Shown piece after piece: positions 1-61,774 of a DNA stretch of 64,000 nucleotides (positions are counted from its first letter, which is position 1; the number at the start of each line of letters is the position of its first letter). The notes beneath the pieces are model-generated. The model was not told the DNA's origin and did no database searches. It worked only from the letters and a program-made list of their open reading frames with translations. Made by a program: the position numbers and the translations under genes. This stretch comes from Chrysemys picta bellii (Eukaryota): the NCBI RefSeq assembly GCF_011386835.1, contig NC_088795.1, positions 100,626,001 to 100,690,000 on the forward strand, written 5' to 3'.

Positions 1-1890
1 CTACTCCTTTCAGATCAGTGTTTAGACTCACCGTACTGTTATGGTCAACAAATATGCAATATGTAATTAGAGGTGAGCCAAACTACTATAGCAAAATTAG
101 AATAGGATATTATACATGTTGATCTTTCTGTAGGACAAGAATTAGGCACACTCGGGCTAAACGAATTCAGACATATTGTGCTTACACGTCTATTGAAGTG
201 TGATTTATCTACACGTTCTTGTTAGGACATGTCATAAGTTACACCCTGATGTTCCAACATCTTTTTTACTACAAATTGCTCTATGCTTAAACATTGAATT
301 AAAAGAATTCCAGCACCAATGGGCATTATAGTTATGTGTCAGCTTAGAAAGAAACTCTATATCTCTAAATAAATGCAACTCCATTCAACAGAGGAGCCAA
401 CTTGTTCACATTTTTTTCAAGTCAAAAAGAATATCATATAAAAAAAAACAACAACCAGGAGGCCCCTGGTTTTCCTACCTGAAGATAATTTTAAAATAAG
501 CACCGCAGTGGCAGCTTGCATTAGAGCTGATGGGCAAACTCACTGTTAGTCACTTTTTGTTTATCTTTTGCAATTAACAGTATTATCTGGTACTTGAACA
601 TTTGGAAGCATCATTTTACCTTGTTGTTCAACATACAGAATGCTCATGAAAGTCAATGGTAGTGGTATGCAAAGACTGAGGGTAGGATTATACCCTTAGT
701 AAGTGAGAACACCTGGACAGCAACAGTAAATATTTAAATGTGCAATAATGTATCAGGAGCTAAAGATGGTAAGTAATGAATATTATACTGAACATTTAAT
801 GTTAGCACTTTTACTGCTTAATTTATAGTAGTCAAAATAAACGTATTCTGTGCTTATTGAAACATTATTGCATATTAAAATATTTACTGTTAGTTCCCAA
901 AGATGAAAACCCCAGAATATGTGGCTGCCAAGCCTGCTAAAGCATGTTCTCATCTGCTTTTCAAAACATGTGTCACGGGCTGGTTCCTTTATATAACAGC
1001 AACTCAGAACACTTCTTGAAATGTATCTGCCTGCAAGGAAGAAGAAAAAGCAATTCTAAGATGCATGTGCTCCTGTTTCTTTGAAATTCATAACACACCC
1101 AAGACTTGTTTCTTTCATTTATTGACAAGTTTCAGACATACCTATTTTTAGTGTATTTGTGGTTGTTTAGTAATTAGTGTCTATTTTCTCTGGACAGAGA
1201 GGTGATCAACATCTGACTAAGCTTATTTTCGTACTTTTCATAGATATAAGTGTCACACAGTGATTTAACATGTTACCTGTGGGTTTCATGTGGGTTTCAC
1301 TTTGAAAGTGGAAGAGGCAAGAAATAAATCATCAGAGTATTTAAAAAAAAAGAGGAAAAATATACTTTTTAATGTTAAGTCCCCTAAGAACAGAAAAAAC
1401 CTTAGGTTCCCACATGTTCAGAAATTCCCACAGCAACTGCATAATACAGCTACCAGCTATAGTTCCAACTGGAAGTTTTAGAAATCTCTGCCTGAGTTGA
1501 GCTTCCATATTACACAAAATCTTTCAGGACTGGCACGGACCTCCGCCCAAACCAACCTTCCCTGGGTTGGGCTAATCTTTCAAGACTAGACTCCCAGGCT
1601 AGGCTAGGTCTTTCAAGACTGGTGCAAATCTTTTGTGTTGGGCAGGCCTTTGCCTGAGCCAGGCTTCCAAGCTAACTTCAGTTACAGGCTGACTTCAGAA
1701 ATTGGAGCAGGAGTTTGCCTAAGCCAAGCTCCCAGGCTAGACTTGATACTTTCACAGTTGGGACAAGCTTTGTAGTTCCTTAACCCCACTCCCATTAAAC
1801 TCCAATCCATTAGCAATCACTCAGTCAATGACCACTCCACCACAGCTATCTAGGACAACGGATAACATTGTTAAAAGTGACTCAGGTATG

Positions 1891-2042
1891 TAAGTCCCAT
1901 TTTCAGAAGTGACTTGGGCTGATTTTTCAAGGGCACAAATGGCACTTAGGTGCCTAACTCCCACTGAAAGTCAATGGGGGTTAGGTGCTAAATATACCTT
2001 TGAAAAATCTGCCCCCAAGTCAAGACTGAAAATGGGACTTAG
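1891..2042. mobile_element. Palindromic MITE-like repeat (nested inverted arms, centre cccactgaaagtcaatggg)
   Basis: agtcccattttcag pairs with ctgaaaatgggact, tgacttggg with cccaagtca, gatttttcaa with ttgaaaaatc. Similar elements at about 24325-24400, 24462-24567 and 35665-35870. Confidence 0.6.
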
Positions 2043-2959
2043 GCACTTTTGAAAATTTTACCCTAGGTCTCAATATTTTGACTTTGTAGTGAGACACCAA
2101 ATTAAGTCAACCTGATTTTAATGTCAACAACCTGATCCTTAAAACAAGAAGGGCTAATAATGGAATAATGTAGATTCTTTCTAAAAAAGGTAAGGCAAGT
2201 ACAGAAACACAAGTAGATGCTTAAGGAAATACAACACAGTGCACATCATATAGCTCAATCATCCATTCAGATTTCAAGGTACCACAGAAACCTGGACCCA
2301 GGTTTCACTGTCTCCCAAGAGCTTTAGCTCAGCTTTGAGAGAGGATTCCATTCACGACTACTGCAGCTCCTACAACCCTAGGCCTCTTTCTATACATTTG
2401 TCCACCTTGATAGACAACCCTTCCTCTCCACACATCTTACTCAGAGATTTATCTGAGGGTGGGGGGATGGAGGGGTGTCCACCCTCACACACAATCTTGG
2501 TGCCAGGTGCTCCCTCCCTCAGAAGTCTTCAGAGGATTATCATGGCCACTCTCACTATTAGTGTCTTTGACAGGGCTAAGAGGTCCTCCTCCTCCAAATC
2601 CCAAATGGTCTTTGGACTCCCTCTCATCTCACCTCAAATCAGAGAGGCATGGCCAAGCCAACAAATAAAGTTTAATCTTGGGCTTTCTGTAAAATGGAGG
2701 ACATGGAGAATAGGGAAAGAAATGAATAGGAAGGCCAGAAACCTCATCTATTTAAGTAACCATTAAAGACATTTTCAAAATACTTTAATAGTGGTACCTC
2801 AGTCTATTTAAATTAAAGAAAATATACATTAAAAAGGGAGTCATAAGTGCTGGAGATGATGTGAGGGAATAGTGACCTTTCTGCATATATGGTGGGAATT
2901 CCCTAAGTTAACAGTGTTCTAGAGGATAAACAACAAATAAAATTTTCAAAATAACTAAA

Positions 2960-3270
2960 GTTAGGTTACCCACAGAACCCATAATGATTCTTTTAGGTTA
3001 CAGTCCAAAGGAGGTTACTGACTCAGGGAAGGACCCACTGATAACACAATTACACTACTAGCAGACAGATATAACATATCTCACTTTTGGAAAAGGACAG
3101 GCCCCCCCAACATTAGCATCATGGAGAAAAGTATAGGGAACCCTTTTAATGGAAAAATGACAGACCCCTTTGCATCAGGATAAAGTAGATGTTGCAGTCT
3201 TTTGGAATTTGTACAAGAGGTTGACTATACACAAATAGGTCTATGAAAAAGGTAACAAAACCAGGTTATG
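2960..3270 (+). mobile_element. Decayed L1/Tx1-like ORF2 3' fragment
   Basis: Conceptual translation ...ISHFWKRTGPPTLASWRKV*GTLLMEK resembles the L1-clade ORF2 C-terminus; contains stops. Boundaries approximate. Confidence 0.4.
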
Positions 3271-3987
3271 CATAAGATTTGTTAATATTTGTATGGAAAT
3301 TTCATGTACATTAAAAATGACAAAATAAAAAGATTAAAAATCAATTAAGCAGAAGGGAGAAACTCTACTAGGATGAAAAGCACTTAAGTATTACTACCCT
3401 ATCTTCATTTCTAATACCTTATAACTGTTTTCTGATCTTCCTACACAAAACGCACAGTTAACATTATATTACACAGTTCCTATTATGTTACTAAGTGTCT
3501 ACATAATGTGCGCATAATTGTCAGCACCATGCTAATCAGTATTTCACCCATAGATTAAAGTACAAGGCCAACTCCTTGAGGACTCTGTTTAACTCCCTGA
3601 AGGGCTAATGGGATTTAGTGAATGACCAATATTTAAACAATCACCTGTGCATCAGAATATACTAAAGAGGCAGTTCAGAAGGACAGCACTGAGCTTCTTA
3701 TCAGCATTTCCAGGCACCAGTCTAAAAATATCCAATGAAATGCCAACAATAAAGTGGCAATTAAGATAAAGTAAATAAGCCATAGGTAAAAGATTAAGAG
3801 TAAATGAAGGAAAGAAGGAAACACCATACATAAATAAAGAGGATTGGGAGAGCCAGTGCTAGATTGACTTATCTATATTGCTTCTAAAACATTTTGTTAA
3901 GACCTGATCCCATTCACTGCGAAAGCTTCAATACAAACCAAGAACACAATTTGTTCTCCATAGGATCTAATCAAAATTTTTACTAAC

Positions 3988-4173
3988 CTTGCAACTTTTG
4001 ATTTTCTTTTTCCATTCTGAGGAGCAGTATCTGTTGAAGAATGGCTTTCTGCCACAGTTCTCGAAGCTCCCGAGTTGTCCGTTTCCTGTCTTCTTTCACT
4101 GGCCCAAAGGGGCCATCTTCACAAACTGGTTCTAACGGGGACCTGGGTGGAAGATCTCCCAATTCAGAGTAAT
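3988..4173 (-). CDS. TBC1D1: TBC1D1 exon (186 nt), region preceding the TBC domain
   Basis: (D)YSELGDLPPRSPLEPVCEDGPFGPVKEDRKRTTRELRELWQKAILQQILLLRMEKENQKLQ; tgaag|AT ... G|gttagt; phase 1-1. The next exon was not found within 1-3987. Confidence 0.97.
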
Positions 4174-5581
4174 CTTCAAGAGACAGAAATGAGCATTACC
4201 CATTTAGGTTTCATAGTCAAATAAAAGGGCACTTTTTCAAAGGCCTGCTGCCACTTGTGCACATGTAAAAAATGTACTATGTATGCATCTAAACTTTGCA
4301 AGCGCAAACACTTGTGTGCACTTTAACCCATGCATAAGCAGTCTCAATAGTCTAAACACCTATCCAAGTGCAAGTGGAACCAATGGATTTTGCAGATGCA
4401 AGTGTTAATATTTGTGTGTGCAGGTGCTTAACTATTGGAAGTACTGGTGTAGATATTAGAATTTCTGAAGTGCACACAGAGCTATATTTGCTCTCGCATA
4501 TGTACAGAATTTTGGACACTCGTGTCAAGAGAATGCCTTTTGTAAATCTCTCTTATGTTACCAGGATAGGGCTACATTATTTAAACAATGCATTTGTATT
4601 GGAAACCTAAAACTGGAAATTTCATGCTTAATTGGACATGCACTTGCATTGTGCCCATATCTATACCTTCTATCTATTCAGGCTCTCTTTCCTTAACATC
4701 AGATCAATTAAAAAGAAATCCTGGCAGGTACATTTTCACTTTCTTCATGACAAAAATTACTGTCTTAGGTTTGACTGAGATCTGTCATTAAAGCTCTGGC
4801 TTCTTTCCACTCCTTGAAGTTACTGTCTCTTGCAGGGGAAGGTGGGGAGAGGCAGAGGGGTGAGAAATCCATGTCTTTAGGCCAGGTTGTTATCAAATGT
4901 GAATTTAAAGTCTCCACACTCTTAACCCATCTTTATTCTTTCTTCAGGTGTCTCTCTCTCATCCAGTTTGAACACCATCCATTCTAAACATGTTTAATCC
5001 AGGTGCTGATATTGGCCATTTGTATCAATGGGAGTTTTCAGACACTGACTTCAGAGGAAGCAAAACTGGAGAAATATGGGCCTGATTTCCACCTTATGAA
5101 ATTTCAATTCCAGCATTTTATTACTGACAATATCTTTCTGTTCCCAGTATTTCCTGTCTGTTGGAAATAGCGCTGAATACCATTCTGCAGTGGTTAAGAA
5201 CTATTTTATCTCATAGTCTGAATATTGTACTTATACCATACAATCCTGTTTCTTCAGTGAGCTCTATGTGAGCAGACCACAGGCAGCCCCAGTGACTGTG
5301 TAGGTGCAGGGTTCTAGCTACACACAGCTCATCTTTCTGATCCGTTAGAAATTCTAATCGATACACCACAAATTTTCATGAGATCAGATGCACTAATTAA
5401 TAGGCCAGACAGTTCAGGATGCTAGCTGTTTGTTTATTATTATTTGACATATTTTACATTTGTGCAAATAAAATATGGGACTCCATCCAGGCAAAATTAT
5501 AAACAGCCCAGTATCAATTCCATAGACACCACGGATACAAAACACACTTCTCCCTCCCTCCCCTTTTAAAAATAGGCTTGG

Positions 5582-5905: not shown

Positions 5906-7434
5906 CATTTTCATCTTTCCTTCTCTTCCTCCCAGCTAATACTCCAGACTGAAATAAATTAATTTACCAAAGAACAGACATAGTACAAGCAGTGATGGGC
6001 CAGATTCTCTAATACCTCCCTGCCGGTGTCTCTCAACTCTGACCTAGAGGAATTTAACTTATAGGGTTGAAACTATAGTTCAGGCACATGCAGTCAGTCC
6101 TTGACCATTTGGCTGAGACCTCCAAGAAGGGAACTAAGGCAGAATTGGTGATGTGCAGAATTCTCCCTTAGAAACCTGACAATAACATAGGCCTCATAGA
6201 AGAATTATGTTTTCATGAGGGACCTGTTGGTGGAGTGAAGACATAGACCAGGTCAAGGAGACGGATTCGAGCATAATCATTAGCTTTATCCTCAAATCTA
6301 GTTGTATGCTGCTCAAGTTAGTACTACCTGGAGGTGAAATGGGAAGCCCAAAGGTATACCACTTTCACAGCACCTTTATCTGGATATCTCAGGGCTGTTC
6401 TCTAAATTATACTGGCTTGTATCAGCCCTACAGCAGCACTTATGCCAGCAAAGGAGTGTTGTAGCACCTCCCCTACCCAACACACTCCCTACCCCAGAGG
6501 GAGTGGAGTTGGCAGAGAAATGGCTTTGCCAGGCAAAATTTCACCAGCTGCCAGTTTAGGGCAGCTTTCAGCTCTTTTGCACCACTGGAGTGACTCATAG
6601 GATCTGTAAGAGAGGCCAGAGACTGGCCCATTATTTCTCAAAACTATAAAGACATTAAAACCACATACTTATCCAATGGCCTGCTAACTAAAGCTTTATA
6701 AACAGGACACTTCAATTAATTACAGAAGCATATGCTAGCAACTGAAAGCTAGTATGTCTCAGAAATTTTAAAATAATCAAAATTAGTATATAAAAAAATA
6801 GCTAAACTAGGCTTGACATAGAAAACACACAAACCTTAACTGTATAAACACAGCACCAATACAGTTCATAATACAGTGGGATTAATACCAGTTCCCAATG
6901 TAAATATTCAGTAATGTAGTCACGAACCCCTACAACTAATGCAAACTGAACAACATTCAAGAAGTGTTTGTTCTAGCTTCTAGCTTTTCTGTCACGTCAT
7001 AACCTTTACCTTTCACCAAATTTTTCACTTATGATTGTGTACTTAAGTACCTTTTGCAGTAAGTCAAGCATGCAGATAGCCCACTTAAAAAATTAATTAC
7101 AGCAGAACTCTTAAATTAGTCACAGAAAAAAAATTCATGAGAATATAAGAGGAATTATTCTTTATTTTTACCGAAACATTGAACAATATTGTTCCTTACC
7201 AAAATAAGTACTTAAGCTTTTTTTTATTTTTTATTTTTTTTGGTAACTCCTGCGACAACATCAGTAATTAATTTAGTCTGTTAACTCTATATATACAGAT
7301 TTAATTTCACCCATCCACTGATGTGTAGCCATTTTATATCGCTACACTGATGGACTCATTAGCCTTAGATGCATACAGTATCTAGAGGGAAAATAACTCA
7401 TTTCCCCACCCATGTGTCATGTCTCCCATGCATA

Positions 7435-7587
7435 GTTGTGGTTGAAAATATACATGTCTTTATCCCAAGTTCCAACTATAAGGCCATGGGACTTCTCCCT
7501 TCAGCCAAACAGAATGGCTGAAGGGAGAAGTCCCATGGCCTTATAGTTGGAACTTGGGATAAAGACATGTATATTTTCAACCACAAC
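7435..7587. repeat. Perfect inverted repeat, 73-bp arms, 7-nt loop
   Basis: 7435-7507 is the exact reverse complement of 7515-7587 (checked base by base). Confidence 0.97.
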
Positions 7588-8884
7588 ATGTATATTTTCA
7601 ACCAAACAGAATGGCTGCACACCCTATCCCAAGGGAAGAGCCAAGTCAGTTTGAGGTTGCCTGGTTCCAGAACAGAGGTTGTCAAACACAAGGCAAAACT
7701 GATTGGACACACGCAAACCAGCCTTTCTAACTCTTCCATAACGTTAGAAGTAAATACACCCAGAGAATGTGATCAGAATTCCAATCTTCCTATTTTTTAT
7801 CTGTACATCCTCCCCTCTCAGTGAAAATATGAGCATATTGATCTTCTTCAGTTTTAGGGAAAACCTATGACGGAGCATCTTTTAGTTCACTGCACGTGTT
7901 ATTTAAACAATTTTAGCTCTTGTGAATTCTCCAATAAAAAACTTCATCATACCAACATGCATCAGTGTGGGATATTAACTAGTCAACATAACAGTTTTTG
8001 CTTCCAGTTCAGCCAATAATTTTAAACTGCAGGAAGGGAGAAAATTGTGTGTCATTTTTGCCTAAACTGATCCTGGTTATCTTCAGACAGGAAAACTTAA
8101 ACCATGTCACTTAAGGCTATAAAAGAGAGATCCATAAAATGGAGATTATGGAAATTATAAAATAAATTATCATGGTGACCAACCCTACCTCTAATCCCAC
8201 CAAGAATGTATCCTAGCTCAGTTTTCCCCTTACAATTGTCGGCTCCTCTTGTGTTTTTTTCTTCTTATTGTTACCAGACATTAAACAGACATCTTAGTCT
8301 TCTCAGACAGAGTTTAATACACTAATTTACCTTCTCTCCCTTGGGAAGCTGTATCAAAAAGGAAACAGACACTTGACAATTCAGCCCTTACCAGTATTCA
8401 TGAACATACAACTGTATCAATGATGGCCATGCAGTACGGCTTCCAGAATCAGAACAGGAGTCAAAGGACTATTTAAAAAAAATTTGAACATTTCAATCTT
8501 TCTTGCAAATGTTTTGAAGGAAGACAAAAAGGAGAGATAAAAGGGAGAATAATTCATTTGAAAGTAATTAGAAGTGCACATTCCAGTGAATCCAACTGTC
8601 ATGTGCAAAAGGTTAAACAATGTGCAACTTTCAAGACCTATAAAAGGATAGCAAGTGCACTGCGGCACAACTTGAATATCTAAGCATACTATTAGTAGAA
8701 ACTGAAGGAATCAGCTTCCCTGTTCACTTGCCAACCTTATAGGATTTTGTTGACCCTGCTTTGCATCTAATCCATATAACTGTAATGCACTGTGAATGAA
8801 AAATAGCCCTCCCTAGGAAAATTAGATCTAAAACTCTAATTTAAATTCATAAAATGCTTTCCTGGTTCATATTTCCTGGCTGGA

Positions 8885-10335
8885 CACAATTTTTTAGTTC
8901 AGAAGGTGGAGACAGCTACTGGGGAGAGGCTGTTCTAGATTTGATTTTGACAAATAGGGTGGAACTGGCTGAGAATTTGAAAGTGGAAGGCAGCTTGGGT
9001 GAAAGTGATCATGAAATGGTAGAGTTCATGATTCTAAGGAACGGTAGGAGGGAGAACAGCAAAATAAAGACAATGGATTTCAAGAAGACAGACTTGAGCA
9101 GACTCAGGGAGTTGGTAGGTAAGATCCCATGGGAAGCTAGTCTAAGGGGAAAACAGTTCAAGAGAGTTGGCAGTTTTTTTAAGGGCACAAAAGCAAACTA
9201 TCCCACTGTGTAAGAAAGATACCAAGTATGGCAAGAGACCACTCTGGCTTAATCAGGAAGTCTTCAGTGAGCTGAAACTCAAAAAAGAATCCTACAAAAA
9301 GTGGAAAATAAGTCAAATTACAAAGGATCAATATAAACAAACAACACAGGTATGTAGGGATAAAATTAGAAAGGCCAAGTCACAAAACTAGATTAAACTA
9401 GCTAGAAATATAAAGGGTAACAAGAAAACATTCAACAAATACAGTAGAAGCAAGAGGAAGACCAAGGATAGGGTAAGGGCCCTTACTCAATGAAGGGGGA
9501 AAAACAATAACGGAAAATGTGGAAATGGCAGAAGTATTAAATTACTTTTTTGTTTCAGTTTTCACCAAAAAGGTTAGTAGCAATTGGATGGCTAACATAG
9601 GGAATGCCAGTGGAAATTAGGTAGGCTCAGAGGCTAAATAGGGAAAGAACAAGTTAAAAATTACTTAGGCAAGTAAGATGTCTTCAAGTCAGCAGGGCCT
9701 GATGAAAGACATCCTAGAATACTCAAGGAGTTGACTGAGGTGGTATCTGAGCCATTAGTGATTATCTCTAAAAAGTCATGGAAGACAGGAGAGATTCCAG
9801 AGGGCCTGAAAAGGGCAAACATAGTGCCCACCTATAAAAAGGGAAATAAGGACAACCCAGGGAATTACAGAGCAGTCAGCTTATCTTCAGTACCCGGAAA
9901 TATAATGGAGCAAATAATTAAGCAATCAATTTGCAAACACCTAGAAGAAAATAAGGTGATAAGTAACAGTCAGCATGGATTTCTCAAGAACAAATCATGT
10001 CAAACCAACCTAATAGCTTTCTTTGACAAGTAGCAAGCATTGTGGATAGAGAGGAAGCGGTAGATGTGATATATCTTGACTTTAAAGCTTATGCTCTAAT
10101 AAATTTGTTAGTCTCTAAGGTGCCACAAGTCCTCCTGTTCTTCTTATCTTGACTTTAGTAAGTCTTTTGATACTGTCTTGCATGACCTTCTCATAAACAA
10201 ACTAGAGAAGTACAATCTAGATGGAACTACTATAAGGTGGGTGCATAACTGGTTCTCAGAGAGTAGTTATCAGTGGTTCACAGTCAAGCTGGAAGGACAT
10301 AACGAGTGGGGTCCTGCAGAAATCAGTTCTGGGTT
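8885..10335 (+). mobile_element. CR1 LINE ORF2 fragment (endonuclease C-terminus to first half of RT), frameshifted
   Basis: [15 protein letters not shown]...[11 protein letters not shown]; WKRANIVPxYKKGNKDNPGNYRxVSL; QHGFLKNKSCQTNLIAFFD. Interrupted at 10084-10144. Confidence 0.92.
10084..10144 (+). mobile_element. 61-bp Penelope-like terminal stub with 12-bp target duplication
   Basis: aaagcttatgctctaataaatttgttagtctctaaggtgccacaag matches the 3' end of the Penelope at about 41652-41700; flanked by tatcttgacttt at 10072-10083 and 10145-10156. Confidence 0.85.
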
Positions 10336-12504
10336 CCATAGAAAATTTCCATGACAATTTTCAGTTTTTCAACAAAGGTGGACATTTTCATGAGAATTTC
10401 TAAGTTGCCCAAAACCGATTTATTTTTCATTAAAAAGAAAAGAGTTTTGATCCCGCCCCCCCCCCCCCACTAGCTCTCATAATCATACTTCTACAGAATA
10501 TACATCACTAGCCTGTGATCGCCAATGACGCATACATGGAGAGATTCATGTGGTGCGGTGGGCTGGCAGAAGGCCCTCTTCATTACTAATTGCCCTGCAC
10601 AGGTGTGAGCTGGGGATAGCACTGAAGTGCAAAAGTACTGGTGCACTTCATACTTGTCATGGAAAGGATTTCTGTGCTGGTCACATATCCTACTGCCTGT
10701 GAAAGGACATGCTGGGAGCAGGCCAAATATCGGTGTTTACTCTTACCCAATAGACTACGCCCCCTGCACAATTGTCTGCCTATAGGCTGGAATGGAATCT
10801 GTGCAGCAGCCCCACCCTCCTATATCCAGACCAATCCCTTGAGCTTGATGTGGGTGGAGTTAATTCATTATATGCATTAACAAGCTCCTGCCCTGAGAAG
10901 ACTAAACAAACTTATGCACAAAGATGAGACACACAATACAATAGGCCACAAAATATTACAAAGAAGGCACTACAGTACGGTATCATCACAGAGCACATGA
11001 GAAAAGTTTAAGGAAACTGGTGACTGAATGTGATACAAATGAAGTCAAACAATATTTATCTGTTAGAGTAACAGAATTTGCAACCTATGCTACTGGACTT
11101 TATAAGCTTCAAGAGAAGAGACAAATAGAAAACATCGCTGGGACCTCACAGAGATTCATACTTTCATAACAAGTAACTAAAATTTTGCCTTCAACCTTTT
11201 TTCAAAACATAAAATGAGTTCCCTATACTAGTTTTCAATGAGAACAGTTTTGTTGTATTCGCCAGTAGTTTCTTGGTCACACAATCTCATTTTTTAAATA
11301 TGATTTTACCAAAAAGCCTATTTTAAAAAATTATCTCAGAACCACATAGTTCAATTAACCTCAAATATCCAGAATAAGATGTGTATCCAGTTAGAGACCA
11401 CAACATTTTAGGTAGAAAAGAGGATTTTGTTGTTATTTGTTTTAAAGAATATTAGGGGGAGGAAATTTAACTTAGAATGTTAAGTGTTACATTGGTAAGC
11501 CTGTTACAGACTACAGAATTGGTACAAGGCTCTATAATCTGACGTTTTGATTCCTGCTCCTATCAAACTTGCCCTCTCGGGTGTCCATGAAAACAAAACC
11601 AGAAAAAAAGAATTGCTATCTTACAGCCATATCCCCATGGACATGTGACCTTTTCAGAGTTTATAAGCTAAGCAAGATATGCCTTGGTCTGAACTCAGAG
11701 AGGACAATTCCAAGGAGTTTTCCCTTTTGTGCACTAGAATATTCATACTTTCTCTTGCTGCACTTCTCCCACTTCAAAATAATTTTTTTAAAATAGGAAA
11801 TTCTTTGCAACCCCTCATTTTAAATTGCGCAAAGAAGTGGATTTCACAATAACCTTAACTCTTCCCGAATGTTTGCATGCATGTATTTCAACAGTTTATT
11901 TCAGACATGATCACAACATGAGGCAATGCTGCATGCTATTCAGCTAGTAATACAAAATCAAAGAGAAACTGCATCTACTGCTATAATTGTAGATGTACAA
12001 GTACAGCATTTTGCATTATTTTACATACATGTCTGGAGTTTTTAAGTCTTCAACGGATGCTATAAAGCACATATAGCTAAAATAGTCAGAGTCCTTTTGC
12101 TTCCAGTAGAGTCAAAAACTGGAACCACATTAAGTAACAAATTCCTTTAGTCTCATACACTGTTCTAAGGGCGGAGGAGGAAGACAACTGAATAGCTAAA
12201 TTAGGAGCTTTTGAAAAACTGTATATTTTAAGATAGCTGTTTAAATATCAGCACTGGGAAATTGTTTTGTTTTTTTTTTGTTTGTTTTTTAGCCAAGAAC
12301 TTGCTATATTCTGCCAAAGCAATACTATATTCTGCTTACAAATAACATAAGCAAATGAGGTGATTTAAGACTTCACAAATTAAAACCCAGGCATTTCAAT
12401 GGGCACACCAGCTGTCAGATCCCAGTGGATTACAAGTGGCAAAGTCTACACCCATAATCCTGCCCAGCAGGTCAATGTGGGCACATGAAAGCTATCAACA
12501 AGTA

Positions 12505-15090: not shown

Positions 15091-17265
15091 AACATTTGGT
15101 TTTGTATTAATTTGTTTTTTGAAACTGTTGTAACACTTTACAAAGACTGTGTCCACAAACTATGTCTTAGACTGTTTTTGGTGTGTGACTAGGGAATAGT
15201 CACATGGCAATGTTCCTTCCTGCTCAGACTGGATGACCAAAAAAGAAAGGATATTAAAGAGGGCTTCATGGACACATTTTTCACAAGACTAACACACCAG
15301 GACTGTTCTTGTGATTGTGAACAATAGCTCTTCTTACTTTATGTTAATTATTATTTACTATAGTTCTATTAGGTACTTAACAAGGCAGTATATCTAGCAG
15401 CAGCCAACAGAACATTCATTTTAACAAGTCTTTCACTGGGTCATTTGCTTGTACAAAACTACTCAAATAAGTGTCACTCCAATCTAGATCTGCCTATTTT
15501 TATTTTTTGATCTAGAGATGTAAAGCTTGAAAGGTTCCATGGTTTGTGACATTTACACCCACACCCAATTTATCCTATGAAGTTTAATAGAGAACTCAGT
15601 CTTTTCCATAATATTTTTTAAAACCACATATAGCTGGTACAAAAGCAAGTATAAAGTGCTCTATTCAGTTCTTCAGGCTGATTTAGAACTTCTGTAGGAA
15701 GGACCTTTTACACACTATATGTTTAAGAGTAATTTTTATAGAAGATGGTTGGTTTCATCCTTTTGAAATTCTACTGACCTGATTCTCAGGTCTGGGCAAG
15801 CTTGTCTTTTCCACTACACCAGATTATGAGGCTGTTAAGGCAACTAGCTATTCCTAGAGTGCAGAAGCATTCCAGCTACTGTACCTTTCCGTTGGCCACA
15901 TCCCATGAATGCATCCTATCAAATGCATTGTCACAGAACAGCTGCAATCAATTTACAGCCTGAAGCATGAAAGTTTATTACCCCATTATTGCATGAAAAC
16001 TATCCTGGTAGGAATTGTGCAAAATATTATAAGAACGTTAAGAATGGCCATAGTGAGTTGGACCAATGGTCCATCAAGCCCAGTATCCTGTCTTCCGACA
16101 AGTGGCTGGCGCCAGATGCTTCAGAGGGAATGAACAGAACAGGGTAATTATCGAGTGATCCACCTCATCATCCAGTCCTAGCTTCTGGCAATCAGAGGTT
16201 TAGGGACACCCAGAGCATGGGGTTGCATCCCTGACCATCTTGGCTAATAGCCATTGATGGACCTATCCTCAAATGAACTTATCTAATTCTTTTTTAAACC
16301 CAGTTATACTTTTGGCCTTCACAACATCCCCTGGCAACAAGTTCCACAGTGCGTTGTGTGCTGTTTGAAGAAATACTTCCTTTTCTTTGTTTTAAATCAG
16401 CTGCCTATTCATTTCATTGGGTGACCCCTGGTTCTTGTATTATGTGAAGTGATAAATAACACTTCCTTATTCACTTTCTCCATATCACTCATGATTTTAT
16501 AGACCTCTATCAGGTCCCTTTCTCATTTGTCTCTTTTCTAAACTGAGGAGTCCCAGGCTTTTTTAATCTCTCCTCATTTGGAAGCAGTTTAATACCCCTA
16601 ATCATTTTTATTGCCCTTCCCTGTACTTTTTCCAATTCTAATATATCCTTTTTAGAGATGGGGTGATCAGAACTGCACATAATATTCAAGATGGGGGTGT
16701 GCTATGCATTTATATAGTGGCATTATGATATTTTCTGTCTTATTAGCTATCCCTTTTCTAATGGTTCCTAACACTCTGTTAACTTTTTTGACTGCAGCTG
16801 CACATTGAGCAGATGTTTTCAGAGAACTATCTACAAGGACTCCAAGATCTCTTTCTTGAGTGGTAAAAGCTAATTTATACCCCTCGTTTTGTATTTAGAG
16901 TTGGGATTATGTTTTCCATTGTGCATTACTCTGCATTTATCAACATTGAATTTCATCTGTCATTTCGTTGCCCAGTAACTCAGTTTTGTGAGATCCCTTT
17001 GTAACTCTTCGCAGTCAGTGTTGGACTTAACTATCTTAAGTAATTTGTTACTGTCTGCAAACTTTGCCACCCGGCTGTTTACCCTTTTTTCCAGATGATT
17101 TATGAATATGTTGAACAGCATAGGAGCCAGTACAGATCCTTTGGGGACACCACTATTTACCTCTCTCCACTGTAAAAACTGTCCATTACTCCTAATCTTT
17201 ATTCCTTATCTTGTACTCAATTACTGATTCATGAGGGGACCTTCCTTCCTATCCAATGACTGCTT

Positions 17266-17998
17266 TACTCCTGGGGAATTCTTCGCCAAAAATTAAAAAT
17301 TCTGCATCAAAAAATTAAAAGTTTTGCATACAATATTGTAAAATTCTGCAAATTTTATTTGTCAAAATAATACTACATAATCAAGCCAATTTCAATTATT
17401 TTGTTTATTTCAAAACTAGGGTGACCAGATGTCCCAATTTTATAGGGACAGTCCCGATTTTTGGGTCTTTTTCTTATATTGGCTCCTATTACCCCCCACC
17501 CCGTCCTGATTTTACACATTTGCTGTCTGGTCACCCTATTTCAAAACACCTGTCAGCAAGTATGTCTCTAACAACACAGACACACACAAGAATTCCCTCA
17601 GGAGTAGAGTGTTAAAGAAACACCTATGACCAACCCAGTTCCTGTTTCTCTGCACCCATCCCCATCCAAGAGCCCAGCGGGGAGCGCAGCCACCAACAAC
17701 CCCTCCCCCAGAGTCCACCCACAGGGCCCCCCGCAGCCAATACACCCAAACCTCCTTCCCCCCAAGCCTAGCCGTGGGCCCCCCCGCAGCCCAGACACCA
17801 GCTCCCCTCCCTCCCCAAATGCAGCTGCGGCTCCCCCAGCAAAGACATTAACCCACTCCCTCCCAGAACCCAGCTGCCCCCTAGTGGTGACAGCAGCACT
17901 GCAGTCTGTTTCTGTGGGGGAAAGGAAATTCTGTGCAAAAACCATTAATTTCTGCAAAATTCTGCATTGCACAGTGGTGCAGAATTCCCCCAGGAGTA
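17266..17998. mobile_element. Non-autonomous DNA transposon with TIR tactcctggggaattct and 6-7 bp target duplication
   Basis: Left tactcctggggaattct, right agaattcccccaggagta; ctgctt at 17260-17265 and 17999-18004; removal restores the CR1. Confidence 0.8.
17417..17538. mobile_element. 122-bp hAT MITE (TIR tagggtgaccaga), nested in 17266-17998
   Basis: TIRs intact; (t)ttcaaaac duplicated on both sides; same family as 19634-19758 in opposite orientation. Confidence 0.88.
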
Positions 17999-19633
17999 CT
18001 GCTTACTTTATGTAAGAGCCTTTGGTGTTTGCACTTTTCAAAGGCTTTCTGAAAATCCAAGTACACTCTATCAATTGGATCACTCTTGTCCATATGCTTG
18101 TTGACATCCTCAAAGAATTCTAGCAGACTGGTGAGGCATGACTTCCCTTTACCAAAGCCATGTTGACTCTTTCCCAACATATCATGTTTATCTTTGTATC
18201 TTATAATTCTGTTCTTTACTATATTTCAACCAATTTGTCTACTGCTGAAGTTAACAAGTTCTTTGAAAAGAAGCCAAGATAAAGTAGAGCAGTTGTGTAT
18301 ATACTAAGCTAGTCTTAACTGTCCATCATAATAAACCCTTGGGAGAGAGAGATGCACAAAAGGTAAATATCTTACATTAGTAAGAAATTCAAAGTAGAAA
18401 AAGTGAATAGTAAGCTATAGTGAATGAGTTTAACACTCTGGTTTCTATTCATAAATAGATATATACATGAGGGAAGAGAAAGAAATTCACATATATTTAC
18501 ACAGAAAAGGGAGAAAAGTGACCAAATCATGTAAATAGATCCCCTAATTAATACTTACTGCTCACATCTTAGCTTCCCTTATTTCTGCAGCTACAATGTT
18601 TATCCAGCTGTAGATTGTTAAGACAGTATCTTGCAGCTGCAGTGCACAGCCAATCCCCAGAGGAAGAGCCAGAATATGCAATCTAGGTGGTATTTCTTTT
18701 TTAAAAAGAGAAACTTTGAAATCACGTGTAAGACTATTTTTGTCAAGGACATCAAATTTGCAAAACTTAGCAGATTCACTGCATAGCTCAAGTTAAGCAG
18801 CACTCTATATCCCTATTCTATTCAAGTTCTTATACTGTGCCCTCACCATGAGCACTTGTGAGCGATGAATTAAGTGGTGTGACTGGTATCTGTCATGTAC
18901 GGTGACTTTCCCATTCCTCTGCTCTTTCCAGCAGGGAAAAAGGTGTAAGGATTTGTCTTTGTTTGTTATGAAGCACTAGGTTTTTATTACAGAAGGCCAG
19001 GTTGAAGAATTGTGCTTTGCACTTGGAACTGAAAGTAGTGAGCTTTGGGGTGATGCTTTAGAGAAAAACCATACAGCAAATCTGTAAAATTACAAAGGAG
19101 GTATATAAACCCTTTTATGCTATTTGTGGGCTCCTCTTGCTCTTGCATGTTGCATTAACATTTGGAAGTCAGAAATCCTGACTCTATGGGCAATGGTCTT
19201 CAGTTTCATTTTTGCTTGTTCAACTTTTAGTCCAAAATAATAAAAGCCTTGGGGGACAAGACTCCCTTTTCATTGTTCTTGGTGTGCCTTATGTAAACTC
19301 CCTATAAGATTTCTAAAAATGGTTTAAGAAATTCACAGAAATGAACACCACCTAATTAGAGGTAGGCAAAAATTCACTAGCTACTCTCTGGGAAAGTTTT
19401 TTATTTTCATCCCTTCCTACAGCCATATTCTATTTTTTTAAAAAGTCAATCGATTGAGATTCCTTAAAGGAATTAAAGGAAAAAATTAAGAGGCGGGAGA
19501 TAAGAAATCACTATTTAATATGAAGGTTTAAAGAAGGCAAATGTTATGGACTGAGGGTACATAGTTAGAACTAAATTCAGACCAGTTTTAAGCAGATACA
19601 ACTCCACTGTGATCAGAAATGTTACATCCCTTT

Positions 19634-19758: not shown

Positions 19759-20264
19759 ATCCCTTTACACCAGGTAGATGTGAATTTTGCCTTTGAGAGC
19801 TCAGTTCTATGGCCAATACGCCAATATATAGCGATACTGTAGTTTCTTTTGATGATACATAGTGATCCTCACTCTGTACTAAAAGGCATCAATGAGAAAA
19901 CAATTATTTTCACAGAATTAATTAAAGGAAATAGGTATAACAAGGTATGCCCCATCCTCTGCCCCCACTTTTCTTTAGCTAGCTGGTGTAATGCAGTCAC
20001 AGATACTATTGTAGATATAACCTAGAGTTGAAAAATAAAAGCTCCATAGCTGAGTACGCCATGCTATGACACAAAAGAGGGTGGGAAACGGCAATGGAAA
20101 TGAGCCACCTGGCAGCTGATTAAATAGCAACCAAAAATTAATACAGGTAGTTCTCCTCAAGCTATTTAAATTGTCACCACCCTACTTAGCAAACATAGGT
20201 ACAGGAGATTAGTACTTCAGCGGTCATTTAGGGCTGCTTGTGTGCAGCCAGATATGGCTCTTAC

Positions 20265-20404
20265 CATCATGTCGGCTGGGAGAATCACATCCTTTCTGTG
20301 GAGTTGCCACTCGAAGGAATATCTGTTGTCTCCATGAATGCCGGCGAGTCCTTACAGGGGTGTCATTGCCAACATCCAGCTGGCTTTGTTTAGACTCATA
20401 GTCA
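20265..20404 (-). CDS. TBC1D1: TBC1D1 exon (140 nt)
   Basis: DYESKQSQLDVGNDTPVRTRRHSWRQQIFLRVATPQKGCDSPSRHD; tttag|T ... G|gtaaga; phase 2-1. Confidence 0.96.
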
Positions 20405-20869
20405 CTAAAATTACAGAGTACAGAAAGGCTTATGAATAAGTTATGACAGACACAAGAGTCGTCTAATGACATTGAAGTGTTAGGTTTCAGGGGACATAAA
20501 AACCAAAGCTATCAAGGAAGGAAGGCTGTGTCCCCCACACATGCTGGGTCAGCATCCATGTGTTAAATGGGTGAAATTCACCCCATTGCTGCAGGTCTGC
20601 ACAAGGTCATACGTATCACTCAAGTTAGTGATTGGGCATATGGCTTTGTGCAGAGTTTGCTTTCCAAGATTTAATTAACTTATTGTCAACATTTTACAAT
20701 TTATTTTGTGATAATACCTAAATACACACAATGTGTAGCAGGTGTACATACAGAACGGTGAAAACAGTGCATATACACACTAACAAACTTTTACATTATT
20801 TGTTAACAGCACTTTTCATTTCTCTAATGACTTTAATTAGTGAATCTCAAGGAGCTCTATTAACATCAG

Positions 20870-24097: not shown

Positions 24098-25764
24098 CTG
24101 AACAGTGGGATTCCAGCCATGTGGGAGGGATGAGGTAAGAAAGAGAGAGAGAGAACAAATCTCAGAAACAGAGAAAAATGAAATGAGATTGCTTATCTAG
24201 CCTCATTTTAAAATGTCCTACTACTGCCAGATAACAATTACATAAATTTCTGATTTACAGCTCTATCTGTAAGGCACTGAGCACTGTAACCTAATCCAGC
24301 AAACTACAGAAGCGTTTGCTTACAGGCCCTGATTCAGCAGGGTACTTAAGCACATGCCTAAATTTATACACATGTTCAAGTGCTTCGCTGGATTGGGGCC
24401 AAAATGCTCAGCATCTTGCAGGATGGTGTCTACATGCACTGTGGAAACTACCTCTAAACCAGGGGTAAGATTTTTCAAAGGAATCTAAGTAATTTACTAA
24501 TCTAAATCTCATTGAAAGTTATTGGGATTTGGGCCTAAATCCCTTGGGCTCTTTTGAAAATTTTATCCTACAAATTTTTCTGAGAGCTCCATTTTCCCAA
24601 CATCGTGTACTTATTGCTTTTATTAGCTTGCCGTAGTATACCACTAAGGGCCCAATCCTTTGAGGATTAAGTGCTCTCAGCTGCTCCCACTGACATCCTA
24701 GGATGGGACCAAAACAGGAATGGCAAAGGAAATTAAACATATATTCAACGTTTAGCTATAGTCCCACAGTAAAATAGGAATGAACTGAGAAAGCAGAAGC
24801 AAGTAGAAAGTTTTAAGGAGGCACTTGTAAAGTTAAACCAACAAGTGCTAAATTGCACCACAAAAGCCATTTAGCATTTAAGGAACAAAAAGGTTCAAAG
24901 AAGAGACAAAAAGGCAACTCGGGTTATGTTTCCTTTTAAATAACAAAATTCTCTTTTTTCACTGTCATCATCTATCTCAAGCATTTACCTTTACCACTCT
25001 GCCTTCTGCAGGAAAAGTGAGCCAGCACAGAGACAGATTTACTACTGTCTAACTTGTGTAAACCAGCAGTTTTGGCAGAGAAACAGAAGTCTACAGACAA
25101 GAATGTTTCCACAGTAACTGGAAAAAGCCAGAGAGAGAGGGAGGGTGAGGGGTGGTGGAGGGGAAGTCCCATAAAGCTTAGTGAGATTTCACGGATGTAT
25201 AAGCAAGCCCTTAAAGGAGGACATCTGAAGAGTATTAGCAAGAAGACTATTAAAAATTTATTTTTGTTAGTGAAACTTTGCAGCTTAATCAAGAATTGCT
25301 TTTATTGCACTGGCTGGTTAAAACTGGACAAGGGTCTGTCCTCTGACACCGATTAGAGAATTTTTTCATTTTTTAAACAGGATTCCTCTTCATAAATATG
25401 AAATAGAGAGGCACCACAAGAACCAGCTATTATTTAGACTGCTTTCAGATACACCCAGCAAGAACTATTTCACATTAGTTGCACAGGCAAATTAATCTCT
25501 CATCATCCACTTATATCATGCTTGTGTAGTAAAATGGCTTTCTGACACTTACTGTGGAATTGCAAGTTTCAGGTTTCGTCTCCCTCCTTGAACAATACCA
25601 AATGAGCAGAGAATATAACGTGTTTTACGCGGATGACACACTGCTCTAACACTAAGCATTACGTTTCTCTTTTGCTAAATGAACATACCTGATATGCAAT
25701 GAACATCCCATAATTTGCCCCAAATATCTATCAAACAATATCCTGCTTTTAAAATGAGTCTTAC

Positions 25765-26039
25765 TTTCGCCTGTGAGGAGTCTCTGTGCTCACTGAATGA
25801 TACCTCATAAGTTTCCTTTGTGGAACAGATGGTGATGTTTCAACTGGTTCCAAAGATTCCTGGTATTCGATAGGCAAGTGACTCAATGTGTTTGCTCGCC
25901 GGCGAAAGCCTTGCTGAGGTAATTTATCAGGCTGCTCGATGGGGTGACTAACTGGGTCACTGGAGACATCTCCCACAGATCCATTGGTCTTGGCAGGAGT
26001 CTCTGGAAGTGGGCCTTCTTTTTCACACAAAGATGGTTC
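25765..26039 (-). CDS. TBC1D1: TBC1D1 exon (275 nt), Thr596-equivalent Akt/14-3-3 motif RRRANTLSH and Ser627-equivalent MRYHSVS
   Basis: EPSLCEKEG...GFRRRANTLSHLPIEYQ...RKLMRYHSVSTETPHRR; gctag|GAA ... AA|gtaaga; phase 0-2. The Thr codon is at 25887-25889. Confidence 0.97.
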
Positions 26040-50809: not shown

Positions 50810-51367
50810 CACTACAGTAAACAACCTCCATCTTCTCTCTATAACCCTGGAGGCATAGCATCTGCCTTCACAAGCTCCTATTGGGGTAGTGTATCTTTGT
50901 ACCCCCTTACTATGAGCTGAGTGCAATAACTGTATATATCTGTGTGGTCTACAAAATAAAAGTAACCTGAGTTTGACTGTTATTTATGAAGACTGTTCAA
51001 TTAACTCTGAAGTACTGTTTACACAGTCTATTTCAGTGACTGATAACGCACTGCACAACACACATACAGCCGAGGGAACCCTGAATTTGCACAACAGTGA
51101 ACCATGTCTTCTGGAATCTGAAAGCAGAACTTGACAGGATATTCGGTCCACTTATTTTTTTATTGCACAGAGAAGAGAGTCTTGACCTCAGATATTACAA
51201 GGCTAAACATTAAACAAGAAATGAAGGCCTTACAAAATTACAGACTGCCAAGGGGTCTACTCACCCATGACATGTGGGGATCCACTTGGAACGAATGGGG
51301 AGGGGAGAATCAATGAGTATTCATGAATGGCAGAACCACCACAAAAATTAATGCACTATCAGTTTAC

Positions 51368-54237: not shown

Positions 54238-54313
54238 AACTAACTTTTATTATTTCTGTGAGATAGAGATAGAGATATATATCTCTATCTCACAGAAATA
54301 ATAAAAGTTAGTT
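54238..54313. repeat. Perfect inverted repeat, 34-bp arms, 8-nt loop
   Basis: 54238-54271 is the exact reverse complement of 54280-54313. Confidence 0.95.
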
Positions 54314-54626
54314 CCAGCCTTTACATCAGATAATTATCAATAATATTTCCTAATAGTTTCTCAACACTGTCCTTTTGAAGCTCAATGTTTTACGTGGTGC
54401 TGTTTTAAACTGTTTCACTTAATATACTTTGACAACGTAAAACAGATTTTTACACTGAATGATAAAACTCTACAAAGAAATATATAAAATTTTATGTGTA
54501 ACAAGCTCCAATAACTGCAGGAAGTTATTCAAGGAGGAACTCTCATCTTTGTAGGACATTTCTTTTGCATTTCCTATCCAGTGTTTAAGAGACATAAAAT
54601 GCTTGCAAAGTTGCAATTTGTTTTAC

Positions 54627-55160
54627 CGTGAACAACATAGTCCGGTTTCCTGCAATATCTGTTGGCTGCACAACGTTGTGTCCATAGCCAAGTTGACGTT
54701 TTAGGTTCAGCGAAGTCTCAGTTTCATCAAAAGAGCTGGCAAAACTGTTACTCCTGCAACTCCCATCTTGCAAGTCCCTCTTAAAAGAAAAGGAACGCAG
54801 CCCAGGCTGAGAATAAGATTTCCTAATTGGCCTTTTCTCTTCTTCTTCACCGACCAAGGGTTGAAAAACAGATCGCAATTTATCACTGAATGATAATCCT
54901 CCAGAATTACTGGCAGTTTCACGTTGTTGGGACAATGAATTAAATTCCAATTTTTTGGTACAACTAACATGGTTAAATTTTTCTATACATTCATCTATTA
55001 ATGCTGGGGGCGCATTTTTGTGTGCTACTGTCACTCGTCCACAGAACAACACCTCAAACTTTTTGGAAAAAGGGTCTTCAACTTCAGATGGATTATTCTG
55101 GAACTCTTCTTGGCGAGCGATTTTTCCAGCCTGTCGAATGGAGCCAATAATCTCAGGCAC
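54627..55160 (-). CDS. TBC1D1: TBC1D1 internal coding exon (534 nt): end of PTB1 region, Ser237-equivalent AMPK/14-3-3 motif, start of PTB2
   Basis: Translates VPEIIGSIRQAGKIARQEE...FEVLFCGRVTVAHKNAPPALIDECIEKFNHVS...RPIRKSYSQPGLRS...NRTMLFT, recognisably human TBC1D1 (VPEIISSIRQAGK...RKSFSQPGLRS...NRTMLFT). Acceptor ttctcgtag|GTG, donor ACG|gtaaaa, phase 0-0. Confidence 0.97.
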
Positions 55161-61730: not shown

Positions 61731-61774
61731 GAAATGTTATAATTGCTAAGAATTATTAAAGTAAGTCATGCCTG

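What the first reader, a model, noticed from the sequence alone, without database searches (positions are those of the whole stretch)
7435..7617. Perfect 73-bp-arm hairpin created by a 97-bp template-switch insertion
Seen: 7435-7507 and 7515-7587 are exact reverse complements around a 7-nt loop. A 19-mer is tandemly re-copied (7565-7583, 7586-7604), and ccaaacagaatggctg is directly repeated 97 bp apart (7505-7520, 7602-7617). Inference: the ancestral locus had only a 6-bp IR (cagcca/tggctg). Replication or repair folded back there, copied about 67 nt of the opposite strand, slipped once, then rejoined at cca. Zero mismatches imply a very recent event. It lies in a TBC1D1 intron, so the pre-mRNA carries a 73-bp perfect duplex. 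That is a plausible ADAR substrate or a newborn miRNA/endo-siRNA precursor, and template switching is a proposed route for de novo hairpin RNAs.
Basis: partly seen in the sequence, partly recalled or inferred. Interest (0 to 1): 0.75.

Follow-up and report, generated by a model that had tools for sequence, protein, structure and literature searches.

The report
Template-switch hairpin in turtle TBC1D1 intron
A copying slip during DNA synthesis pasted a backwards copy of neighbouring bases into an intron of a turtle's TBC1D1 gene, making a perfect 73-base-pair hairpin that is real and shared by two related turtles but absent from a third; it is a clean example of a known mutation type with no shown function.

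Summary

The structure is real and single-locus. An independent sample of the same organism carries every junction, and the arm has twice the depth of its flanks. A second organism (C) also has the hairpin. A third, more diverged organism (D) has one contig that skips exactly 97 bases (7504 to 7602).

The long form parses into four templated pieces of the short form with no untemplated letters:
- forward to 7520
- reverse-complement copy of 7501 to 7435
- reverse-complement copy of 7455 to 7439
- forward again from aacagaatggctg

Junction microhomologies are 6, 2 and 3 nt. This rules out an assembly artefact and a MITE and supports a chained template-switch insertion.

The event is not "very recent": it is homozygous in three individuals of two organisms. 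The host gene is TBC1D1 (minus strand), so the pre-mRNA should carry the duplex. RNA editing and small RNAs could not be tested.

This is a known mutation class, though the return point lies upstream of the departure point. The scan has noted similar scars elsewhere in this genome.

The parts
7435..7501 (.). Source segment (outer 67 nt of the left arm). It is ancestral sequence and the template of the inverted copy.
   Evidence: Organism D's short allele keeps it without any listed difference (tables 3 and 8). maps 7521-7587 to the reverse complement of 7501 to 7435.
7502..7507 (.). Left half (cagcca) of the pre-existing 6-bp inverted repeat, where the fold-back was primed.
   Evidence: Present in the short allele. 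The ancestral 3' end 7496-7520 folds as DNA into this 6-bp hairpin at -5.4 kcal/mol, 91% of the ensemble.
7508..7514 (.). Loop aacagaa (ancestral).
   Evidence: Loop-spanning contigs are present in X1, X2 and X10 (table 8).
7515..7520 (.). Right half (tggctg) of the pre-existing 6-bp inverted repeat. It gives 6 nt of microhomology at the first jump.
7521..7587 (.). New inverted copy, 67 nt: an exact reverse complement of 7501 to 7435. It completes the 73-bp right arm.
   Evidence: Absent from organism D.
7588..7604 (.). Second inverted copy, 17 nt: reverse complement of 7455 to 7439, made after a 21-nt backward slip with 2 nt (ac) of microhomology.
   Evidence: (D2, I2).
7605..7617 (.). Thirteen ancestral bases (aacagaatggctg) copied a second time after the return to the original template. 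The return was guided by ttcaacca pairing at ttcagcca (3 exact nt, 7 of 8).
   Evidence: (D1). The A at 7601 comes from the copied tggttgaa, not from a later point mutation.
7505..7601 (.). The 97-bp insertion as placed by the read alignment. Because of the 16-nt direct repeat, it can equally be placed anywhere up to 7521-7617.
   Evidence: table 5: X14 skips 97 letters, 7504 to 7602, with 16 letters fitting both sides.
3986..4195 (-). Open frame holding the downstream TBC1D1 exon (gene sense). It is the nearest exon, about 3.2 kb from the hairpin.
   Evidence: Pfam DUF3350, E 1.3e-24, 86.6 bits against a cut-off of 25. Translation.
20227..20508 (-). Open frame holding the upstream TBC1D1 exon (...RRHSWRQQIFLRVATP). 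Together with the 3986-4195 exon it bounds the roughly 16-kb intron that holds the hairpin.
   Evidence: Gene named by hits to the exon frame 54588-55160(-).

Best explanation
This is a germline mutation scar. One complex template-switch event during DNA synthesis inserted 97 bp into a TBC1D1 intron.

The ancestral sequence read ...cccttcagccaaacagaatggctgcacacc... and held only a 6-bp inverted repeat (cagcca / tggctg) around a 7-nt spacer. The inferred steps are:
1. A growing plus-sense strand ending in ...tggctg (7520) left its template and paired with cagcca on itself, or on the identical sister strand.
2. It copied 67 nt backwards (7501 to 7435).
3. It slipped back 21 nt on 2 nt of microhomology and copied 17 nt again (7455 to 7439).
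4. Its new end ttcaacca re-annealed to the original template at the look-alike ttcagcca.
5. Synthesis then resumed, copying aacagaatggctg a second time.

The event happened after the lineage of organisms A and C split from organism D, and before or around the A/C split. It created a perfect 73-bp stem with a 7-nt loop. The stem is transcribed within the TBC1D1 pre-mRNA (gene on the minus strand), more than 3 kb from any exon.

It most likely has no function and drifts neutrally. Its likeliest RNA-level consequence is promiscuous A-to-I editing of the intronic duplex.

Shown: the structure, its reality, single-locus status, the short allele, the templated parse, and the gene context.
Inferred: the order and direction of the jumps, replication versus repair synthesis, neutrality, and editing.
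For: - **Structure.**
- **Reality in the same organism.** Run X2 (organism A, a different sample and study from the possible source X1) has four contigs: 6900-7464 (depth 25.7), the arm 7435-7507 (depth 55.2, twice the flanks), the loop piece 7478-7544 (depth 28.1), and 7558-8100 (depth 29.3), which covers the slip and the right junction.
- **Presence in a second organism.** X10 (organism C) has the loop piece 7486-7582 (depth 44.4, as expected for a homozygote) and 7558-8100.
- **No short allele in carriers.** None of X1, X2 or X10 shows a short-allele contig.
- **Short allele.** X14 (organism D, 12 substitutions in 1,104 nt) has a single contig that skips 7505-7601 and keeps G at 7504.
- **Templated parse.** The derived sequence is exactly four templated segments of the short form, with no untemplated letters.
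- **Feasible priming.** The ancestral 3' end forms the priming 6-bp DNA hairpin at -5.4 kcal/mol.
- **Neutral decay.** In organism C one haplotype has an uncompensated 1-nt deletion at 7439 in the left arm (table 4).
- **Gene context.**
- **Known mechanism.** PMC5453318, PMC9435742, PMC8794818 and PMC10710096.
Against: - Only one outgroup (D) was examined, so polarity rests on parsimony. Deletion between the 16-nt direct repeats would regenerate exactly D's form.
- The event needs three jumps, not the single switch-and-return of the four-point model.
- Its return point precedes its departure point. That type was reported as not observed among 794 human-chimp and 90 human-human events (PMC5453318).
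- All runs were Logan contigs, so no single read spans the whole hairpin. Its continuity is inferred from overlapping pieces and depths.
- Neutrality is inferred from one polymorphism and from base rates.
- No RNA data were examined.
Confidence: 0.77

Rival explanations
1. The product is the same, but it was made during break repair rather than at a replication fork. One route is snap-back synthesis by an end-joining polymerase (polymerase theta type). Another is microhomology-mediated break-induced replication after a break or a pair of staggered nicks near 7500-7520.
For: Three successive jumps on 2-6 nt of microhomology, with no untemplated letters, are also the signature of iterative snap-back synthesis (general knowledge of templated insertions in theta-mediated end joining). 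Staggered nicks with long 3' overhangs would explain the 13-16-nt direct duplication in the way a target-site duplication arises. PMC5453318 found no events with the return upstream of the departure in replication-type scans.
Against: A clean two-ended break cannot give the direct duplication of aacagaatggctg, because an intact template or long overlapping overhangs are needed. Copied tracts of 67 nt are long for typical theta-type insertions (own knowledge). Nothing in the sequence separates the two settings.
Confidence: 0.3
2. The hairpin is older than the A/D split. Organism D lost it secondarily by slippage between the two 16-nt direct repeats across the palindrome. D's form would then be a reversion, not the retained ancestral state.
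For: Deleting one repeat copy plus the 81 nt between the repeats gives exactly the sequence seen in D, including G at 7504. Palindromes flanked by direct repeats are known deletion hot spots (PMC7999016, listed; own knowledge). Perfect arms over the whole A/D divergence would still have a probability of about 0.45.
Against: It needs two events where one suffices. The short form must have existed in any case as the precursor of the long form.
Confidence: 0.1
3. The structure arose in two separate mutations: first a 16-nt tandem duplication of ccaaacagaatggctg, then an ordinary inverted-repeat-forming template switch between the two copies.
For: Each step would be of a commonly observed type. 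This avoids the unobserved '4 precedes 1' class.
Against: No run shows the intermediate. It needs two rare events at the same few bases. The second step still needs the extra 21-nt slip.
Confidence: 0.08
4. The hairpin is a newborn functional RNA locus: a miRNA, an endo-siRNA precursor or an editing-dependent regulator of TBC1D1.
For: It is a perfect duplex in a transcribed intron. Template switching has produced at least 18 human miRNA genes, mostly in the sense strand of introns (PMC10710096). Weak hits to palindromic miRNA families mir-3160 and mir-4662.
Against: All Rfam hits are far below gathering scores (48 against 80 bits, 43 against 97) and reflect any long perfect hairpin. The stem is 73 bp and the loop 7 nt, against a preferred stem of about 35 bp and a loop of 10 nt or more. 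Only 0.9% (57 of 6,054) of template-switch hairpins of suitable size are annotated miRNAs (PMC10710096). Organism C has an uncompensated deletion in the stem. No RNA data were examined.
Confidence: 0.03
5. It is an assembly or library artefact (a fold-back chimeric read), or a copy of a multi-copy palindromic transposon (MITE).
For: Perfect palindromes are a known artefact of some long-read libraries (own knowledge). MITEs are palindromic (own knowledge).
Against: All three junctions are present in an independent sample of the same organism and in a second organism. Arm depth is exactly twice the flank depth, not tens or hundreds of times. The empty site in organism D keeps the whole left arm, whereas a transposon's empty site would lack both arms. 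The arm occurs nowhere else in the window.
Confidence: 0.01

Closest known systems
Short-range template-switch mutations (TSMs; four-point model of Loytynoja and Goldman 2017, PMC5453318; Loytynoja 2022, PMC9435742)
   Same: A reverse-complement copy of sequence from within 100 bp is inserted in one step, with no untemplated bases and only 2-6 nt of identity at the switch points. It creates a novel perfect inverted repeat where only a 6-bp one existed. It is polarised by a related genome and inherited by more than one lineage.
   Different: It needs an extra intermediate jump (a chained event). At 67 + 17 nt copied it is much longer than the mean of 11.6 bp, although maxima of 97-180 bp per person are reported. 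The return point (7508) lies upstream of the departure point (7514 or later), so the loop is duplicated in direct orientation. That class ('4 precedes 1') was reported as not observed in primate comparisons. The points lie in the order 3-2-4-1, which is compatible with an intra-strand fold-back.
Template-switch-generated RNA hairpins and de novo miRNAs (Monttinen and Loytynoja 2022, PMC8794818; Monttinen et al. 2023, PMC10710096)
   Same: A perfect stem is created in a single event, inside an intron of a protein-coding gene, where it is transcribed with the host.
   Different: The stem is about twice the pri-miRNA optimum and the loop is shorter than preferred. There is no expression or processing evidence. 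The organism is a turtle rather than a primate or rodent.
[quoted passage not shown]
   Same: The nascent strand folds back at a short inverted repeat and uses itself as template, extending the repeat into a longer perfect one.
   Different: Here the pre-existing repeat was only 6 bp and 84 nt of new complementary sequence were added, rather than a few mismatches corrected. It is a vertebrate germline event.
Templated insertions of polymerase-theta-mediated end joining (snap-back synthesis); FoSTeS / MMBIR
   Same: Serial microhomology-guided jumps, and inverted copies of flanking sequence.
   Different: The scale is local (under 100 bp), unlike FoSTeS/MMBIR rearrangements. The direct duplication at the return requires an intact template or long overlapping overhangs.

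Membership tests
Template-switch mutation (four-point model) | The derived sequence equals a forward fragment, then a reverse-complement copy of nearby sequence, then a forward fragment, with nothing left unexplained. | tested here: met
   a minimal parse into 4 exact segments (41+, 67 rc, 17 rc, 36+ nt in the tested span) with no untemplated letters.
Template-switch mutation (four-point model) | The ancestral (unswitched) form is seen in a related genome or allele. | tested here: met
   the X14 contig skips 97 nt, 7504 to 7602. Only one outgroup was checked, so polarity rests on parsimony.
Template-switch mutation (four-point model) | The derived form is inherited, meaning it is seen independently in more than one sample or lineage. 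| tested here: met
   junction contigs in X2 (organism A, independent sample) and X10 (organism C).
Template-switch mutation (four-point model) | A single switch-and-return described by four points, of one of the six observed types (point 1 before point 4). | tested here: not met
   a third jump (21-nt slip) is needed. Point 4 (7508 or earlier) precedes point 1 (7514 or later) in either replication direction. PMC5453318 did not observe that class. Chained TSMs are reported in PMC9435742.
MITE / palindromic transposon | Multi-copy in the genome, and an empty site that lacks the whole element. | tested here: not met
   arm depth 55.2 against flanks of 25.7-29.3 in X2, which means two copies (the two arms). 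Organism D's empty site retains the left arm; no other copy in the window.
Canonical pri-miRNA hairpin | A stem of about 35 bp with an apical loop of 10 nt or more (PMC10710096), or a match to a curated family. | tested here: not met
   Stem 73 bp, loop 7 nt. All Rfam hits are below gathering scores.
Canonical pri-miRNA hairpin | Discrete small RNAs of about 22 nt produced from the stem. | not testable with these tools
   The single reads call was used on DNA contigs. No small-RNA run was offered.
ADAR substrate (long intronic dsRNA) | A long uninterrupted duplex within a transcribed region. | tested here: met
   A 73-bp perfect stem on the gene's sense (minus) strand, inside a TBC1D1 intron. 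Transcription is inferred from intron position, not observed.
ADAR substrate (long intronic dsRNA) | Clustered A-to-G differences in RNA that are absent from the DNA of the same individual. | not tested
TBC1D1 gene (host) | Exons matching TBC1D1 proteins, collinear on one strand. | tested here: met
   The exon frame 54588-55160(-) hits proteins that their sources name TBC1 domain family member 1, from Vipera, Myotis and Saguinus, at E 1e-47 to 1e-64. The frame 3986-4195(-) matches DUF3350. Further exon frames lie on the minus strand in descending order.

The most novel reading that the evidence does not exclude
The hairpin is more than a scar. As a 73-bp perfect duplex in the sense strand of a TBC1D1 intron, it would be hyper-edited and/or diced into small RNAs. 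That would make it a newborn lineage-specific regulatory RNA locus in turtles, caught within a few million years of its one-step birth.

A more modest but likelier novel reading is mechanistic. It would be a natural vertebrate example of an intra-strand fold-back template switch whose return lies upstream of its departure. That class was reported as absent from primate comparisons. My estimate for this mechanistic reading alone is about 0.4.
Probability: 0.03. Interest if true: 0.6.

Novelty: new member of a known kind. Interest (0 to 1): 0.38.

Why it matters
This is a fully resolved, polarised example from outside mammals. One copying error turns unstructured intron DNA into a perfect 73-bp hairpin, and every base can be traced to its template. 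That is the raw material proposed for de novo hairpin-RNA genes.

Two details are useful to specialists. The event chains three jumps. Its return point also lies upstream of its departure, a geometry that primate scans reported as unobserved and took as an argument against intra-strand switching. One case does not overturn that. It does show that scans should allow for this class, or for repair-linked events that mimic it.

For the turtle itself the insertion is most likely neutral.

Tried and rejected
- **Rfam.** I searched around the hairpin at a permissive threshold and the whole window at gathering scores. Only sub-threshold matches to families that are themselves long perfect palindromes turned up, so they say nothing about function.
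- **More outgroups through the protein collection.** I looked up 16 open frames around the hairpin by exact sequence. None is in the collection. A look at how genes are called on Logan vertebrate contigs showed that only about 1 in 10 spurious frames is called, so I ran no further search on it.
- **Gene naming.** NCBIfam gave nothing, since it covers bacterial models. Pfam gave no hit for four of the five exon frames. A motif search for a RabGAP-side exon in 1-3,900 found nothing, so solved structures were not used to name the gene.
- **Alternative origins considered and rejected.** A simple 21-nt tandem duplication after a shorter switch fails, because 7584-7587 (caac) pairs perfectly with 7435-7438. 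MITE and assembly artefact were rejected.
- **Limits and compliance.** No N occurs in the window. Exons were searched one at a time by reference and never joined.

Full report
**1. Observation**

The sequence is as described.
- Arms 7435-7507 and 7515-7587 are 73 nt and 100% complementary around the 7-nt loop aacagaa.
- The 19-mer 7565-7583 recurs at 7586-7604.
- A 21-nt direct repeat, 7500-7520 / 7597-7617, has one mismatch (G7504 against A7601). The exact 16-mer ccaaacagaatggctg therefore lies 97 bp apart.
- A 42-nt piece of the arm occurs only at these two places in the window, with 0.00 expected in shuffles.
- RNA folds give -158 kcal/mol (z -22) on the plus strand and -164.8 kcal/mol (z -18.6) on the minus strand. 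The DNA fold gives -90.6 kcal/mol.
- It is the longest close inverted repeat in the window. One other perfect one exists (34-nt arms at 54238-54313).
- The window holds no N.

**2. Is it real, and is it single-copy?**

Twenty of the 24 public runs listed hold the stretch or a part of it. I laid four of them on 6900-8100. All four are Logan contigs built from 31-mers, so a perfect inverted repeat must break them at the arm boundaries. That is what is seen.

| Run | Organism | Contig pieces (depth) |
|---|---|---|
| X2 | A, a different sample and study from the possible source | 6900-7464 (25.7); arm 7435-7507 (55.2); loop piece 7478-7544 (28.1); 7558-8100 (29.3) |
| X1 | A, possible source | 6900-7464; 7486-7587; 7558-8100 |
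| X10 | C | loop piece 7486-7582 (44.4); 7553-7587; 7558-8100 |

- In X2 the 7558-8100 piece covers the end of the right arm, the 21-nt slip and the right junction.
- The arm depth in X2 is twice that of its flanks. The sequence therefore occurs exactly twice per genome (the two arms), and the loop junction is at full depth.
- The X10 loop-piece depth of 44.4 matches what a homozygote would give.
- None of these three runs shows a short-allele contig.
- This refutes an assembly artefact and a multi-copy palindromic element.

**3. The predicted short allele exists**

X14 (organism D) differs from the window by 12 substitutions in 1,104 nt. It gives a single 2,937-nt contig that skips 97 letters, 7504 to 7602, with 16 letters fitting either side (table 5). 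It keeps G at 7504 and the whole left arm.

**4. Reconstruction**

I took the short form as the source. A dynamic-programming parse of 7480-7640 needs four exact segments and leaves no letter unexplained:
- forward to 7520
- reverse complement of 7501 to 7435 (67 nt)
- reverse complement of 7455 to 7439 (17 nt)
- forward again from aacagaatggctg

Microhomology at the three junctions:

| Junction | Microhomology |
|---|---|
| First jump | 6 nt (tggctg / cagcca) |
| Backward slip | 2 nt (ac) |
| Return | 3 nt exact (cca), or 7 of 8 for ttcaacca on ttcagcca |

- The A at 7601 is explained as a copy of tggttgaa (7439-7446), not as a later substitution.
- The ancestral 3' end folds as DNA into the priming 6-bp hairpin at -5.4 kcal/mol, 91% of the ensemble.
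- A later simple tandem duplication cannot replace the slip, because 7584-7587 (caac) pairs perfectly with 7435-7438.

**5. Age**

- Organism C differs from the window by 4 fixed and 1 heterozygous substitution in about 1,200 nt. Organism D differs by 1.09%.
- The insertion is thus shared by two organisms and homozygous in three individuals. It is not a private or very recent event.
- Over half the A-C distance, the 146 arm bases expect 0.24-0.30 changes, so the probability of none is about 0.75. Even over half the A-D distance that probability is 0.45.
- Perfect arms therefore need neither extreme youth nor selection.
- In organism C one haplotype carries an uncompensated 1-nt deletion at 7439, in the left arm (table 4). 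This looks like the start of neutral decay.

**6. Polarity caveat**

Deletion between the 16-nt repeats would regenerate D's form, so an older origin with loss in D is not excluded. I put it at about 0.1. The short form must in any case have preceded the long one.

**7. Gene context**

- Open frames on the minus strand at 54588-55160, 42207-42488, about 38 kb, 25764-26039, 20227-20508 and 3986-4195 look like exons.
- The last of these matches Pfam DUF3350 at E 1.3e-24.
- The first hits proteins that their sources name TBC1 domain family member 1, in Vipera, Myotis and Saguinus.
- The exons were searched one by one by reference. I made no joined model.
- The hairpin lies in the roughly 16-kb intron between the exons at 20.3 kb and 4.1 kb, more than 3 kb from either. 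The TBC1D1 pre-mRNA (minus sense) should therefore contain the duplex.
- Earlier notes of this scan call this genome painted-turtle-like. Run organisms were coded, so I name none.

**8. Comparison with what is known**

This is a short-range template-switch mutation.
- In humans such events average 11.6 bp, with maxima of 97-180 bp per person, and they can be chained (PMC9435742).
- They can create whole perfect hairpins in one step and have seeded miRNA genes, mostly in the sense strand of introns. However, only 57 of 6,054 suitable hairpins are annotated miRNAs, and Drosha prefers a stem of about 35 bp with a loop of 10 nt or more (PMC10710096).
- The present stem (73 bp, 7-nt loop) lies outside that range.
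- Rfam gives only sub-threshold matches to palindromic miRNA families.

One detail departs from the primate picture. The 7-nt loop is copied twice in direct orientation, so the return point (7508 or earlier) precedes the departure point (7514 or later) whichever way replication ran. In the four-point model such types were possible in theory. They were not observed among 794 human-chimp or 90 human-human events, and this was used to argue for inter-strand switching (PMC5453318). Three readings fit this detail:
- an intra-strand fold-back with reopening of the new duplex
- repair synthesis after staggered nicks
- two successive events

The sequence alone cannot choose among them.

**9. Function**

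Nothing was shown. The best-supported expectation rests on general knowledge of ADAR, not on a test here: a long perfect intronic duplex is promiscuously edited and otherwise inert. No RNA evidence could be obtained, because all runs were kept as contigs and the single reads call was used on DNA.

**10. Verdict**

The template-switch reading is supported, including its specific prediction. The artefact and MITE readings are refuted. 'Very recent' is overstated, and the functional part is untested and unlikely. It is a new member of a known kind, with a mechanistically interesting geometry. Similar scars have been noted by this scan elsewhere in this genome.

Noticed in passing
window 54238-54313: A second perfect close hairpin in the same gene: arms 54238-54271 / 54280-54313, 34 nt, 100% complementary, 8-nt loop. 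It lies beside GA/TA-rich simple sequence, about 275 nt from the low end of the TBC1D1 exon frame 54588-55160(-). It is a candidate second template-switch scar.
   Followed up: partly
window 7430-7439 in run X10 (organism C): Organism C is heterozygous here. One haplotype has G>A at 7430 and a 1-nt deletion at 7439 inside the left arm, with no matching change in the right arm (tables 3, 4, 8).
   Followed up: partly
window 8845-10351 (+), 16513-18225 (-), 61760-62398 (+): Open frames with LINE-like endonuclease / reverse-transcriptase sequence, apparently CR1-type by eye. They look like decayed retrotransposon insertions in TBC1D1 introns.
   Followed up: no
window 47400-50900: A GC-rich block (GC 0.45-0.49 against about 0.38 elsewhere) with long low-complexity Pro/Gly/Arg-rich open frames on both strands, up to 220 aa. 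It could be a CpG-island-like or GC-rich repeat region inside the gene.
   Followed up: no
window 35700-35851: An imperfect close inverted repeat: 62-nt arms, 76% complementary, 28-nt spacer. It could be an older, decayed hairpin or a transposon remnant.
   Followed up: no
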